NCBI GenBank assembly: GCA_965240325.2
Contig: OZ251222.1
Coordinates: 3,472,001 to 3,536,000, forward strand
Length of the DNA stretch: 64,000 bases
Direction: 5' to 3'
DNA from: Rebecca billardiae RCC1528
Taxonomy: Eukaryota > Protista > Haptophyta
Positions 50,875 through 54,549 of this stretch are shown one piece after another. Numbering within the stretch: position 1 is the first letter of the stretch; each line of letters starts with the position of its first letter. Under the pieces are notes generated by a model, which was not told the origin of the DNA, made no database searches, and saw only the letters and a list, made by a program, of their open reading frames with translations. A program made the position numbers and the translations under genes.

Positions 50875-51611
50875 GGGCCACGCCGGCGTGCCGGCGGCCG
50901 CGGCGTTGGCCGCGTTCCAACTCCAAGGCCATCGCTCGTCCGGCGGCGGTCATCATTGTCAGCAGGTGATGCAATAACGACCCGTCTATCCGCCGGGCAG
51001 TCGCTGCTATGTCACGTAATGACGACCGAGGAACGCTATAGGCGCCAGCGCTGCACATTATCAGGTCGATCATCATAAGTCCCATCGCTCTTCATTACAG
51101 CAGTACCAGCAGGCAGCAGACCATCGCCACGCACACCTCAAACTCAGTAGTCTCACAGGGCTGCTCTTGGACTACTGTACAAAGCTAAAGGGTCCGCCGC
51201 CATCCTGCATCCATTCGCGGCGGGTTATTTTTCTGAATTCTGTCTCATGCTGACTCTGATGCTACTGCTGGCATGCAGCGCCGTCTGACGCGCGCTGTTT
51301 TCTGTCTGCTACTGCTGGCAGCGCCGCTGTCATACGACGATCGCGACGACTACGGTGATTACGAGTCCATCCACAAGGGACTAGTAGCATCAGTGAATTC
51401 ATATTCACGGACTGTCAGTGTCACTCGGTCTCGGTGTGCTGTCACTCGCGTCGATCAGTCAGATCACAGATGGCACGACGCACAAGGCAGCTGGTATGGC
51501 CTCGTCGCCGGTCGTGCTCGCACCTCGCAGACACGAGTGCGGGCCGGAGCCTCCAGCAGCATGACCCGATGCCATCGCCGCACCGGCCTCTGCTGTCTGT
51601 CTGTCATCTGC

Positions 51612-52446
51612 TCACGACCAGATGGCGGGACGAATAATGTTCTTCATGACCCACCGCACCTGCGTGTGCACACAGGCCGTCCAAAGCACCAACCGGTCAG
51701 GGCGTCCCCAGGGGGGCACGTAAGGAGGGGCGCGCGCGTGAGCGCCGCGCATGGCCGGCGAGAACTCGCGAGGCCCGTGCGCGAGGCGCCGCGCGCACCC
51801 CCAGGAAGCAGAGCAGAGGCCAACCTTCGCAGAATCGTGTGGCTGCGGGCGAGGGTGGGGGTAGCGGTGGCGGTGCAGGCGGAGGCGGTGGGGAAGGAGG
51901 CGGCGAGGGCGGAGGCGGTGGAGGTGGAGACGGTGACGGCGGCGGTGACGGCGCAGGGGCGGGAAACGCGCAGGGATTGTCGTCCCCAGCACTGTTGTCC
52001 CAGGTGATGCCACCGCAGGCGTATGTCTCGTCCGGGCGGGCCGCAAGTCGGCGCTGCTCGCGCATGGCAAACAGGAGGCGGCGGCCTCCTCCTCCTTCCG
52101 TGGGGCAGTACATGGCGCAGGTGAAGCCATCTGTGACGGGCGTGAAGAGTCGGCGGCCGTGGAGAGAGCCCACCGCGGCCAAAGCGTCCTCCTCGCTCGA
52201 GAAATCCTCGGTCAGCGCGCGCCGCCCGCAGCTGACCATCTGGCACGTACATGCGGTCGGCGTGCACTCCCACATTGCCACCAGCGTGTTGCCGTCGAAG
52301 CAGGAAAAGTCGACCGTCCGCGTTGGGGCGAAGGCAAGGAGGTTCGAGGCGAGCGTCTCCAGGTTGCACCCGCTGCCTGCCACGAGCTCACACCGCACGA
52401 GGAACGCAGTGAGCGTGACCGCGTGCACGAGCGCACCACGACGCAT
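51612..52446 (-). CDS. Small secreted Cys-rich protein with four RR(x)L sites and a Pro stalk; exons 52446-51799, 51659-51612 (~231 aa)
   Basis: Signal-like MRRGALVHAVTLTAFLVRCELVAG; GRRAL, GRRLF, GRRLLF and RRLAA; GT-AG intron 51798-51660. Confidence 0.72.
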
Positions 52447-52934
52447 GACCGCGGGTGCGACGATCTGCGGCGATGGGAGACACGGAGGGCGCCGCGTGAC
52501 ACGAGTCAGTGTGGCGCGTGCCGGTTCGAGCGTCACATCGCGCGGAGTGTGCGCGGGCGTGAGTGTGCGCGGGCGAGTTCGAGCGGCCTACCGTCGTCGG
52601 CCGCGGGACAACGAGTCAAACGACCTATCTGGCCAGGCCCAGCTCCTTGAATATCGGAATGAAATTAGTGATCACCTGCTTGATTCCTTTGATATCATAA
52701 TGATTGTCGTGCCGACTGCCGATGACCGATTGACCGTCGGCGGCGCTCATTATGAAAGGGGGCGGGCAGCCGAGATAGTAGTACTCGCACGGCGAGATGA
52801 GCCCTCGCGACTAATTGTCGGCTTCTTAGATCGGCGGATGCGGCCAGATACTATTTTCATGATCATAATTATGATCGGATTCCATGTCATCAGAAGCTTC
52901 GGAACGTTATTCGTGGCCGCCTGTGCTTCGCAAC

Positions 52935-54549
52935 ATGCGCTCCACCCTCGCGACGTGGGCCGTGTGCGTGCTCTGCATCCCGCTGGCTGTCGCCCATGAC
53001 GAAGACGGGGCACTCGGAGATGGCAGCCCTCGGCCTGCACGCGACCTCGCTGCGCGCGAGGACCAGCACAGCCGCAGGATGTGCGCGCACGCCAGCCAGC
53101 GACTGCGGGCGCGGCGGCAGCGCTGCCGTCGCGTCGTCGCGTCTCACACTGCGCTTCTCGGCCCGGCCCGGCGCGTGCAGGCTAGCAAACGCTCCGCTCG
53201 TGCAGACAGGCACGGATGGCGCCGACACTCTCGAAGGTGGTGAAGGGTGGGCCAACATAATCTATGGTTACGCTGGTGATGACAACCTGATTGGTGGGGA
53301 TGGCTCGTACAATCCGCGCGGCTTCGATGACACGCACAACTACATCTTCGGTGGTGCTGGCAACGACGACATTGTTGGCGGCGACGGTGGGGCATTTGGC
53401 ATAGTGCAAGGTGGCGACGTGTACAACTTCCTCCACGGCGGGGCTGGCGACGACACACTCTCTGGCGGCGACAGCTTTCCTTTGGAGGCCTACGGCACCA
53501 ACGCGTACAACTACGTTTATGGTGCGCGCCGGCGCTCGGCGCCCTTGTCGCACCGCGGTGCTCGGCTCACGCGTCGCGTCGCGTCGCCCGCGTGCACACC
53601 GGTCTGCCTCTGTAGGCGGCCAGGGTGAAGACACTCTGTACGGCGGCTACAGCGCCTACGACGTGCTCGAGGGTGTGCGCGCGTGCGCTGGATGCGCGTG
53701 CGCGCGTGGCGTGCGCACGCCGGGGTTGGGTGGCGTTTGGTTGGGGAGCATCTCGCGCCCGTCGATGCCACCTGCATAGGCGGATCGCGCGCGCAGCACA
53801 CGGGTGGCACACGTTGAGCGCGTGTGCTGCCCGCCGCGCCGCCGCCCTGCGCAGGCGGAGCCGGATACGACAAGATCTTCGCGGACAATGCCAACGACGG
53901 CTGGTTGGGTGGCAGGGACGTGATCAACGTGACTGACGGCGAGTACGACAAGGTGTACGCAAGGGATGGTGCCTACGACCTCGTGTATGCCGACGTTGGC
54001 GACTACGTGGACGCGGATGAGACCGACGTCGTCGTGTGGAGCGGAGGGGACAGCGACGGCACTGGAGCCGGGGACGATCAGGTTGGCAACACGACGAAGT
54101 CGCTGCTGCCCTCGCCATCGCCTCCGCCACCGCCGACGCCCTCGCCGCCCATCACGCTCGTCGTCAATGTCGACTGCTCGTGTCCGCCATCGCGGCCATC
54201 CTCCCGGCGCTCACTCCGGCAGGTGGTCCCAACGGTGGTGAGAACTGAGACGCGCATGTCGCCTGGCCAGCTCACTTCACATGAGCGTGCACCGACGTCA
54301 AGCCCCCCTCGCAGCAAGCAGGCCAGCCACGACAGCGCGACGACGCACGGAGATAGCCGTCCAAAATCACGCGCGCACGCTCTTGCGAGCGCTGTCGCAC
54401 GTGCTCTTGCCCCTCACGCGGCGAGCTCACGCCGTCGGCCGCGACGGCTACTCTTTGGTGGCTTCGGGGGAGTGCCACCGTGTCCGGCCGCGCTGTGCAC
54501 TCCCAACGCCGATGGCATGCCGGCTGCCTCACCTGCGAGCCAGCCTTGA
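52935..54549 (+). CDS. Secreted RTX/hemolysin-type Ca2+-binding repeat protein; exons 52935-53080, 53181-53521, 53616-53672, 53855-54549 (~412 aa)
   Basis: Signal peptide MRSTLATWAVCVLCIPLAVA; nonapeptides GYAGDDNLI, GGAGNDDIV, GGAGDDTLS, GGQGEDTLY and GGAGYDKIF. Three GT-AG introns keep frame. Confidence 0.85.

What the first reader, a model, noticed from the sequence alone, without database searches (positions are those of the whole stretch)
51612..54549. Divergent secreted pair sharing a prohormone-like 'Cys - RR(x)L - spacer - RRLLF - Cys' module
Seen: the minus-strand protein reads CTCQMVSC-GRRAL-(acidic spacer)-GRRLF...CAMYC...GGGGRRLLF-AMREQ-RRLAA...C...C. The divergent RTX protein has RRML after its pro-piece and ends DCSCP...RRSL-(~80-aa spacer)-RRLLFGGFGGVPPCPAALC. 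Known: dibasic sites are convertase targets, Gly before a dibasic site is the PAM amidation signal, and RXL processing occurs in diatom wall proteins. Inference: spacers are excised like a C-peptide, leaving disulfide-linked and possibly amidated chains. This would be an undescribed processing-dependent peptide or matrix-assembly system driven from a shared 488-bp promoter.
Basis: partly seen in the sequence, partly recalled or inferred. Interest (0 to 1): 0.78.

Follow-up and report, generated by a model that had tools for sequence, protein, structure and literature searches.

The report
Algal surface proteins with RRxL-bracketed spacers
Two neighbouring genes of a GC-rich (probably pavlovophyte) alga encode secreted proteins in which cysteine-free spacers are bracketed by conserved Arg-Arg-x-Leu motifs; these motifs look like site-1-protease cutting sites and are kept in the paralogues, but no cutting has been shown.

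Summary
Both genes are real, intron-containing and signal-peptide-bearing, and their ATGs lie 488 bp apart on opposite strands. Every quoted motif is present.

- **RTX gene tail.** It is a conserved, undescribed C-terminal module: (SPPP)n rod, VDCxC, RRxL, a Cys-free spacer of 44-122 aa, R-x-L-L-F-G-G, PxCPxxLC, stop. At least 12 genes of this genome carry it. Only 2 of 1.84 billion public cluster representatives match.
- **Minus-strand gene.** It has two paralogues (38% identity) that keep three RR(x)L sites. Each head has 4 motifs against about 0.1 expected (P<5e-5). A sample of 68 other coding ORFs shows no enrichment (obs/exp 1.08).
- **Protease.** RRxL and RxLL match the recognition motifs of site-1 protease (S1P/SBT6.1) and the diatom "RXL" sites. 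The genome encodes a clear S1P orthologue. No kexin-type convertase was found.

Not supported:
- The two genes' modules are not detectably homologous.
- "RRLLF" in the minus gene is not conserved in its paralogues.
- The divergent pairing is unique to this locus.
- No Gly precedes the module's sites, so amidation is unlikely there.

Cleavage is inferred, not shown. This is a new variant of a known kind of processing; interest is moderate.

The parts
51799..52446 (-). Minus gene, exon 1. It encodes a signal peptide, a 10-Cys head carrying four RR(x)L motifs, and a Pro/Ser-rich stretch.
   Evidence: Translation. Two paralogues are 38% identical.
51612..51659 (-). Minus gene, exon 2 (VRWVMKNIIRPAIWS-stop), after the intron 51660-51798. 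It has no transmembrane helix, unlike the paralogues.
   Evidence: Splice signals GTGCGCGC...ACACGCAG. Exon 2 of the paralogues encodes a TM helix and a basic tail.
52213..52224 (-). RRAL, site 1 of the minus protein. It lies directly after the 6-Cys segment. The paralogues have RRVL here.
   Evidence: R75, R76 and L78 are invariant in A1.
52147..52158 (-). GRRL, site 2, within the invariant HGRRL. It lies 8 residues before C-x3-C.
   Evidence: H96, G97, R98, R99 and L100 are invariant.
52072..52083 (-). It is specific to this copy and is not conserved in the paralogues.
52045..52053 (-). RRL (QRRLAARPDE), site 3. The paralogues have RRRL followed by acidic residues.
   Evidence: R132 and R133 are invariant.
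52447..52934 (.). The 488-bp stretch between the two ATGs, with an AT-richer core at about 52640-52880. A shared promoter is possible but untested.
   Evidence: The pairing is not seen at any paralogue.
52935..53080 (+). RTX gene, exon 1. It encodes the signal peptide and a 30-aa pro-piece ending in RR-M(L). The Met codon is split by intron 1.
   Evidence: Three RTX-family paralogues also have R(R)xL directly before the repeat domain (RRSL, RGRAL twice).
53181..53521 (+). RTX gene, exon 2: RTX/beta-roll nonapeptide repeats.
   Evidence: Pfam PF00353, E 1.7e-8, 34.7 bits.
53616..53672 (+). RTX gene, exon 3: GGQGEDTLYGG..., one more repeat.
53855..54549 (+). RTX gene, exon 4. It encodes YAxDGxYD repeats, a short SP-rich linker and the C-terminal module.
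54154..54498 (+). The conserved C-terminal module: LVVNVDCSC, RRSL, a Cys-free spacer, RRLLFGGFGGVPPCPAALC.
   Evidence: The profile of the module matches 13 places in the own genome, 9 of them at E<=2e-11. See also alignments A3/A4.
54205..54216 (+). RRSL, module site 1. RRxL is present in 10 of 11 module sequences; the eleventh has RPYRAL.
54442..54453 (+). RRLL, module site 2. The invariant core in all 11 sequences is R-x-L-L-F-G-G.
54499..54549 (+). A 16-residue extension plus stop, unique to this copy. All other copies stop 0-1 residue after the last Cys.

Best explanation
Both genes encode lineage-restricted secreted or cell-surface proteins. Their conserved RRxL / R-x-L-L motifs are most likely proprotein-processing sites of the site-1-protease (S1P/SKI-1/SBT6.1) or diatom 'RXL' type, cut in the Golgi or late secretory pathway.

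In the RTX protein there would be three cuts. One removes a 30-aa N-terminal pro-piece (after RRML). Two bracket the Cys-free, hypervariable spacer of a C-terminal 'foot' module. After those cuts the last ~17 residues (LFGG..PxCPxxLC) would stay tied to the VDCxC segment through the four invariant cysteines.

In the minus-strand protein, three conserved sites separate a 6-Cys segment, a C-x3-C segment and a final 2-4-Cys segment. Cutting would likewise give disulfide-held chains and release short acidic or Gly/Tyr-rich spacers.

Shown: the motifs, their conservation and their statistical excess; the Cys pattern; the coding status of the spacer; and the presence of an S1P orthologue.

Inferred: that any cut happens, which enzyme makes it, the disulfide pairing, and the biological role (maturation or anchoring of rod-like surface proteins).
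For: 1. Motif excess over composition.
- 4 observed against ~0.1 expected in each minus-family head, P<5e-5.
- 3 observed against 0.16 expected in the RTX protein, P=0.001.
- No excess in 68 other coding ORFs, obs/exp 1.08.

2. Positional conservation.
- In 11 module sequences from at least 7 lineages under 50% identical, the only invariant columns are D-C-x-C, R-R-x-L, R-x-L-L-F-G-G and P-x-C-P-x3-C.
- In the three minus-family proteins, RR.L, HGRRL and RR are invariant at 38% overall identity.

3. Spacers run from 44 to 122 aa, cannot be aligned between subgroups, and contain no Cys.

4. RRVL, RRLL and RRIL are experimentally used S1P recognition motifs (PMC2685025). RRXL is the S1P/SBT6.1 site of plant RALF precursors, which are also 4-Cys peptides (PMC11371470). 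A signal peptide followed by ~30 aa ending in RRL/RXL is the diatom 'RXL domain', removed by an unknown protease (PMC5525289).

5. The genome encodes an S1P orthologue.
- E 1.6e-138 to human S1P 8uw8_A over chain residues 160-763.
- Pfam MBTPS1_3rd and MBTPS1_4th at 79 and 171 bits.
- It carries an RGLL about 20 residues before its catalytic domain.

6. Four RTX-family paralogues place R(R)xL directly before the repeat domain.
Against: - There is no peptide, protein or RNA evidence for cleavage.
- P2 of module site 1 is often polar (S, Q, E, A, R), whereas characterised S1P sites prefer a hydrophobic P2.
- The second Arg of site 2 is not invariant (SRDLL, GRELL). One relative has RPYRAL at site 1.
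- The RGLL of the algal S1P does not align with the human RRLL autoprocessing site.
- AlphaFold models were of low confidence (pLDDT 57.6 and 46.1). Exposure of the sites and pairing of the two ends are therefore not shown.
- The background ORF sample is small and biased: mostly protease loci plus this window.
Confidence: 0.45

Rival explanations
1. The proteins are not cut. The module would be a small disulfide-closed loop domain with a disordered insert. The Arg-Arg-x-Leu motifs would be kept for structure or binding, for example to acidic or sulfated polysaccharides or to scale material.
For: The four invariant Cys sit at the two ends with a variable loop between them. The polar P2 at site 1 is atypical for S1P. 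No evidence of cleavage exists. Within the closest subgroup the spacer itself is partly conserved.
Against: Binding motifs rarely need an exact RRxL at the boundary between Cys segments and Cys-free spacers in two unrelated families, and again after an N-terminal pro-piece. The motifs are verbatim protease recognition sites (PMC2685025, PMC11371470).
Confidence: 0.25
2. The C-terminal module is a removable sorting or anchoring signal. It could be a GPI-like or vesicle-targeting C-terminal propeptide. The whole tail after the first RRxL, or the hydrophobic LLFGG... end, would be removed, and no two-chain product would remain.
For: The module always lies at the extreme C-terminus after a rod, with the stop 0-1 residue after the last Cys in 10 of 11 copies. 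The last ~17 residues are mostly hydrophobic. Paralogues of both heads use a TM anchor instead, so the module occupies the position of an anchor.
Against: GPI signals are not conserved in sequence and do not carry invariant Cys and Pro. The hydrophobic stretch is short and is interrupted by D, Y or N. The window copy ends with 16 hydrophilic residues after it. This reading does not explain the minus-family sites.
Confidence: 0.12
3. The sites are cut, but by another enzyme. Candidates are a plasmepsin-V/ASP5-like aspartyl protease (the TEXEL motif RRLxx) or one of the at least 36 mostly secreted subtilases of this genome.
For: [quoted passage not shown] The minus family has RRL sites (GRRL, RRRL). 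The subtilase family is large, and some members carry SP-rich rods themselves.
Against: The module sites have a residue between RR and L (RRxL), which fits S1P or RXL sites better than TEXEL. No ASP5 orthologue was sought. The S1P orthologue is clear-cut.
Confidence: 0.13
4. The motifs are a chance product of the Arg-rich, GC-driven composition, or of reading non-coding DNA.
For: The genome is 65-80% GC and non-coding frames hold 18% Arg.
Against: Shuffle tests give P<5e-5 and P=0.001. The motifs are invariant across paralogues and two foreign relatives. The reading frame is kept and the stop position is conserved.
Confidence: 0.02

Closest known systems
S1P/SKI-1 (animals) and SBT6.1 (plants) substrates with RRXL or R-x-hydrophobic-L sites, for example plant RALF precursors
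   Same: The proteins are secretory. The tetrapeptides are verbatim (RRLL, RRVL, RRxL). They lie at the boundary between a pro or spacer region and a Cys-bearing segment. RALFs also have four Cys. An S1P orthologue is present in the genome (PMC2685025, PMC11371470).
   Different: There is no sequence homology to any known substrate. Two sites bracket an internal spacer at the C-terminus of large rod proteins. P2 is often polar. Cleavage has not been shown.
Diatom 'RXL domain' proteins (silaffins, cingulins, silicanin-1)
   Same: A signal peptide is followed by ~30 residues ending in RRL/RXL. In the diatom silaffins this piece is known to be removed, by a protease still unknown (PMC5525289). 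The RTX gene has exactly this N-terminal layout.
   Different: The organism is a haptophyte-type alga, not a diatom. There is no similarity to silica proteins. The additional internal and C-terminal sites and the module are not known from diatoms.
Insulin-type two-chain precursors with an excised C-peptide
   Same: Conserved Cys-bearing ends, a variable Cys-free connecting piece, and basic processing sites at both junctions.
   Different: There is no homology. The sites are RRxL rather than KR/RR cut by a kexin-type convertase, and no such convertase was found. The module is the tail of large extracellular proteins, not a small hormone.
Toxoplasma TEXEL (RRLxx) substrates of ASP5
   Same: RRL motifs in secreted proteins, used at N- or C-terminal ends (PMC4764566).
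   Different: Most sites here are RRxL. The lineage is different. No ASP5 orthologue was tested.
Hydroxyproline-rich rod glycoproteins of algae and plants (extensin/pherophorin-like), including GPI-anchored AGPs
   Same: A globular head sits on an (SPPP)n rod, and the C-terminal element occupies the position of an anchor.
   Different: The C-terminal module has no counterpart in Pfam, the PDB, the Atlas or 1.84e9 cluster representatives, apart from 2 hits.

Membership tests
S1P/SBT6.1-type proprotein substrate | Enters the secretory pathway (N-terminal signal peptide) | tested here: met
   Judged by inspection only, as no predictor was available. The N-termini are MRSTLATWAVCVLCIPLAVA and MRRGALVHAVTLTAFLV...AG. 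The paralogues have clear hydrophobic N-termini.
S1P/SBT6.1-type proprotein substrate | RRXL or R-x-(L/V/I)-L recognition motif | tested here: met
   RRML, RRSL, RRLL, RRAL (window); RRVL, RRQL, REL-L and others (paralogues). The motif definitions come from PMC2685025 and PMC11371470. P2 is polar at several sites.
S1P/SBT6.1-type proprotein substrate | The cognate protease is encoded by the organism | tested here: met
   G000:C1:1914000-1916800 (-) matches human S1P at E 1.6e-138. It has Peptidase_S8 plus MBTPS1_3rd and MBTPS1_4th.
S1P/SBT6.1-type proprotein substrate | Cleavage after the motif in vivo or in vitro | not testable with these tools
   This needs proteomics or an enzyme assay.
Diatom RXL-domain proteins | A signal peptide followed by a short pro-region ending in RXL | tested here: met
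   In the RTX gene a 30-aa piece ends in RRML. The paralogues read ...ARRSL|QG...RGRAL|AN and ...RGRAL|QI, but their splice models are unverified.
Diatom RXL-domain proteins | Homology to silaffins, cingulins or silicanins, or association with biosilica | tested here: not met
   No Pfam hit apart from RTX. No homologues by word search. Only 2 orphan relatives of the module.
Kexin/PC-processed, PAM-amidated peptide precursor | A kexin/furin-type convertase (S8 domain with an adjacent P domain) is present | tested here: not met
   There is one P_proprotein hit (28.9 bits) on C37 with no S8 domain in the same frame, and none of the 36 S8 hits lies on that stretch. The counts are lower bounds.
Kexin/PC-processed, PAM-amidated peptide precursor | A conserved Gly directly before the dibasic pair | tested here: not met
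   Module site 1 is preceded by A, S, G or P, and site 2 by R, Q, T, S or G. The one exception is the invariant HG-RR-L in the three minus-family proteins.
Kexin/PC-processed, PAM-amidated peptide precursor | A PHM/PAM monooxygenase is encoded | tested here: inconclusive
   Cu2_monooxygen N-domain: 5 hits over the cut-off. C-domain: 23 hits. At least 3 loci carry both. The lyase (PAL) part and the specificity were not tested.
RTX / beta-roll calcium-binding repeat proteins | GGxGxD nonapeptide repeats matching PF00353 | tested here: met
   E 1.7e-8, 34.7 bits against a cut-off of 23, in 3 stretches.
GPI-anchor attachment signal | A C-terminal hydrophobic stretch running to the end, with no sequence-specific conservation | tested here: inconclusive
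   The tail is hydrophobic but short, with invariant Cys and Pro and polar interruptions. The window copy has a 16-residue hydrophilic extension. No GPI predictor was available.
TEXEL/ASP5 substrates | An RRLxx motif and an ASP5/plasmepsin-V orthologue | not tested
   RRL occurs at two minus-family sites, while the module sites are RRxL. The protease was not sought.

The most novel reading that the evidence does not exclude
A pavlovophyte-specific two-chain 'foot'. S1P-type cuts at two conserved sites excise a hypervariable C-peptide-like spacer from the C-terminus of rod-shaped surface proteins. A 17-residue hydrophobic peptide stays disulfide-tethered to the rod and anchors or cross-links it. 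The released spacers, and the short spacers of the minus-strand family, act as diffusible peptides. If so, S1P would also be a strong candidate for the still unidentified RXL protease of diatom wall proteins.
Probability: 0.25. Interest if true: 0.65.

Novelty: new variant of a known kind. Interest (0 to 1): 0.5.

Why it matters
Proprotein processing at RRXL/RXL sites is well studied in animals (S1P) and plants (SBT6.1: RALF and other precursors). It is observed in diatom wall proteins, where the protease was still described as unknown in the 2017 paper read here (PMC5525289), and a full-text search for RXL, diatom and site-1 protease found nothing. I found nothing comparable described for haptophytes.

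This locus gives a compact, testable case. It offers a new orphan C-terminal module on at least 12 rod-like surface proteins and a small 3-gene family. In both, invariant S1P-type motifs sit exactly at the borders of Cys-free spacers, and a single clear S1P orthologue is encoded in the same genome.

If cleavage is confirmed, it would show how these algae mature or anchor their very abundant (SPPP)n surface rods. It would also point to S1P as the RXL protease of chromalveolate algae. If it is not confirmed, the module is still a new lineage-specific domain of unknown role.

Tried and rejected
- **Spacer as an unspliced intron or UTR: rejected.** It is open and in frame in all 11 copies, the stop position is conserved, and a transcript-like contig carries it.
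- **Homology between the two genes' modules: rejected.** hhalign gave E 0.17 over only 8 columns.
- **A conserved divergent gene pair: rejected.** No paralogues lie next to each other.
- **Known domains for either protein: none found.** Pfam gave RTX only. PDB profile searches hit only the Pro-rich part or nothing. The ESM Atlas was blank. The word search for the minus protein was blank.
- **AlphaFold2 of the module and of the minus protein: uninformative.** pLDDT was 57.6 and 46.1, so no fold search was run.
- **More relatives in metagenomes: none found.** A 20-base-specified pattern for LLFGGLxxLPxCP found nothing.
- **A decayed TM remnant downstream of the minus gene's stop: rejected.** The alignment score was 24 against a shuffle mean of 25.
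- **RGLL of the algal S1P as the counterpart of the human RRLL autoprocessing site: not supported** by the alignment.
- **Tool failures.** The listing of cluster members timed out and one contig look-up failed.
- **Spliced model.** All searches were run exon by exon by reference. The joined four-exon model was built only inside scripts, to check the frame and count motifs. It was not sent to any search or fold.
Full report
**Setting**

The window is part of a 72-Mb, 41-contig eukaryotic assembly. GC content is 58-80%. Introns are of GT-AG type and share the donor GTG[C/T]GCGC. Earlier notes of this scan call the organism a pavlovophyte haptophyte. I did not test that.

**Gene models**

The minus-strand gene has two exons.
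- Exon 1 is 52446-51799. It encodes a signal-like N-terminus, a 10-Cys head and a Pro/Ser-rich stretch.
- A 139-bp intron follows (51798-51660).
- Exon 2 is 51659-51612 and encodes 15 residues plus the stop.

The plus-strand gene has four exons: 52935-53080, 53181-53521, 53616-53672 and 53855-54549.
- When joined inside a script they give an uninterrupted 412-aa frame.
- The protein reads signal peptide, a 30-aa pro-piece ending RRML, RTX repeats (PF00353, E 1.7e-8), YAxDGxYD repeats, a short SP-rich linker and a C-terminal tail.
- All database searches used single exons by reference. The joined model was used only for frame and motif counts in scripts.

**The RTX gene's tail is a real, conserved module**

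tblastn of the last exon against paralogous loci showed both ends of the tail conserved around a divergent middle.

A profile of the tail matched 13 places in the genome, 9 of them with E from 2.6e-54 to 2.1e-11, and none had an internal stop. The layout is always the same:
- an (SPPP)n rod;
- [LV]V-x-G-V-D-C-x-C;
- 3-11 residues, then R-R-x-L;
- a spacer;
- (R)-R-x-L-L-F-G-G, then 4-9 residues, then P-x-C-P-x-x-L-C;
- the stop.

Further properties:
- The stretch from the C-x-C to LLFGG is 44-122 residues long, cannot be aligned between subgroups, and never contains Cys.
- The stop follows the last Cys by 0-1 residue in ten copies. Only the window copy runs on, for 16 residues.
- The heads differ widely: an RTX beta-roll here, an RCC1-like propeller, unknown Cys-rich heads, and open frames of 1,633 and 5,315 aa.

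So the module is a generic C-terminal 'foot' of rod proteins.

A full HMMER pass over 1.84 billion cluster representatives found only two relatives.
- One is on a 1.1-kb JGI contig that ends in a ~490-nt untranslated tail, so it looks like a transcript.
- The other is on two metagenome contigs with eukaryotic neighbours.
- Both keep the motifs: ARRAL...RRALLFGG, and RPYRAL...GRELLFGG.

The frame conservation and the transcript-like contig together show that the spacer is coding, not an intron.

**The minus-strand gene belongs to a three-member family**

Two paralogues, on C5 and C12, are 38% identical to it.
- Invariant columns include the Cys, RR-x-L right after the 6-Cys segment, H-G-R-R-L a few residues before C-x3-C, and RR(R)L before the last Cys pair.
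- The stretches between the sites are Cys-free. The first is acidic. The second is Gly/Tyr-rich in the paralogues.
- The paralogues have a second exon with a TM helix and a basic tail. The window copy does not, and no remnant could be detected.
- No homologues were found outside the genome.

**Are the motifs more than Arg-rich noise? Yes.**

| Sequence set | RR.?L observed | Expected | Result |
|---|---|---|---|
| Each of the three minus-family heads | 4 | 0.07-0.13 | P<5e-5 |
| Whole RTX protein | 3 | 0.16 | P=0.001 |
| 68 other coding-like ORFs (37,099 aa) | 44 | 40.6 | obs/exp 1.08 |
| Non-coding frames (18% Arg) | 1,147 | 1,201 | obs/exp 0.95 |

The expected values in the first two rows come from shuffling each protein. 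The ORF sample comes from the loci in hand and is small and biased.

**What the motifs resemble**

- RRIL, RRLL, RRVL and RRYL are S1P recognition motifs (PMC2685025).
- RRXL is the S1P/SBT6.1 site of plant RALF precursors, which also have four conserved Cys (PMC11371470).
- In diatoms, a signal peptide plus ~30 residues ending in RRL/RXL is the 'RXL domain'. An unidentified protease removes it in silaffins (PMC5525289).

The RTX gene's N-terminus has exactly that layout. Three RTX-family paralogues also have R(R)xL directly before the repeat region, though their splice models are unverified.

At module site 2 the invariant register is R-x-L-L, followed by FGG. This is the S1P consensus R-x-hydrophobic-L.

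**Candidate enzymes**

- **S1P.** One clear orthologue lies at G000:C1:1914000-1916800. It scores E 1.6e-138 against human S1P and has Peptidase_S8, MBTPS1_3rd and MBTPS1_4th. It carries an RGLL about 20 residues before its catalytic domain, but this does not align with the human RRLL site.
- **Other subtilases.** At least 36 S8 domains exist. One is tripeptidyl-peptidase II.
- **Kexin type.** A kexin-type S8+P enzyme was not found.
- **PHM-like monooxygenases.** These are numerous. Gly is not conserved before the module sites, so amidation is plausible at most for the HG-RR-L site of the minus family.

**What is not supported**

- hhalign finds no homology between the two families, only the RRxL octet at E 0.17.
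- The divergent pairing is unique to this locus.
- Structure prediction gave low confidence. Neither the pairing of the two Cys-bearing ends nor the exposure of the sites is shown.

**Reading**

The most economical explanation (about 45%) is S1P/RXL-type proteolytic maturation at conserved sites that bracket Cys-free spacers, giving chains held together by disulfides.

| Alternative | Weight |
|---|---|
| Uncut disulfide-closed loop domain | ~25% |
| Another protease makes the cuts | ~13% |
| Removable C-terminal sorting or anchor signal | ~12% |
| Chance | ~2% |

It is a parallel lead, not evidence.

**Verdict**

This is a new, lineage-restricted module that carries a known kind of processing motif, and its function is unproven.

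Noticed in passing
G000:C1:1914000-1916800 (locus L077, minus strand): A clear orthologue of site-1 protease (MBTPS1). It has the S8 domain plus the MBTPS1 third and fourth domains, and scores E 1.6e-138 against human S1P.
   Followed up: yes
G000:C12:2839812, 2845606 and 2851400 (L025-L027): Three tandem copies of a rod-plus-module gene at a spacing of 5,794 bp. Their module sequences are identical.
   Followed up: partly
L021 about 1500-2400; L002 600-1420 (-); L003 1990-2420 (+): An RTX-family paralogue and the minus-family paralogues share a second kind of anchor. It consists of the SP-rich linker, C-G-P-[IV]-C-[FL]-[FV]-T, an intron at that exact point, and then an exon with ...SRFL..DD.. 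and a TM helix with a basic tail. Heads seem to be shuffled onto two alternative anchors, a TM cassette or the C-terminal module.
   Followed up: partly
window 51273-51640 (+): An ORF convergent with the minus gene. It starts with a signal-like MQRRLTRAVFCLLLLAAPLS followed by an acidic, Tyr-rich DDRDDYGDYES. It may be a small secreted protein, and it reaches to the 3' end of the minus gene.
   Followed up: no
G000:C12:478-491 kb (L051-L053, L055) and C5:841-888 kb (L063-L065 and more): Tandem arrays of subtilase genes. Four copies on C12 each have one in-frame TGA inside the S8 match (an intron or a break). At least five near-identical copies (99%) lie on C5. Several subtilases carry SP-rich rods.
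   Followed up: no
G000, many contigs: At least 23 matches to the C-terminal domain of copper type II ascorbate-dependent monooxygenases (PHM/DBH-like). This is an unusually large family for a unicellular alga.
   Followed up: no
G000:C37:709316-709624 (L037, minus strand): A lone proprotein-convertase P-domain match (26.6-28.9 bits) in a long open frame, with no subtilase domain next to it.
   Followed up: partly
G000, genome-wide: The first look found 7,227 candidate matches to an (SPPP)n rod. The open frames around them reach 21,132 aa, so Ser-Pro rods are a dominant feature of this proteome.
   Followed up: no
G000:C12:553100-554482 (L049): An orthologue of tripeptidyl-peptidase II (E 6e-147 to 3lxu_X).
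   Followed up: yes
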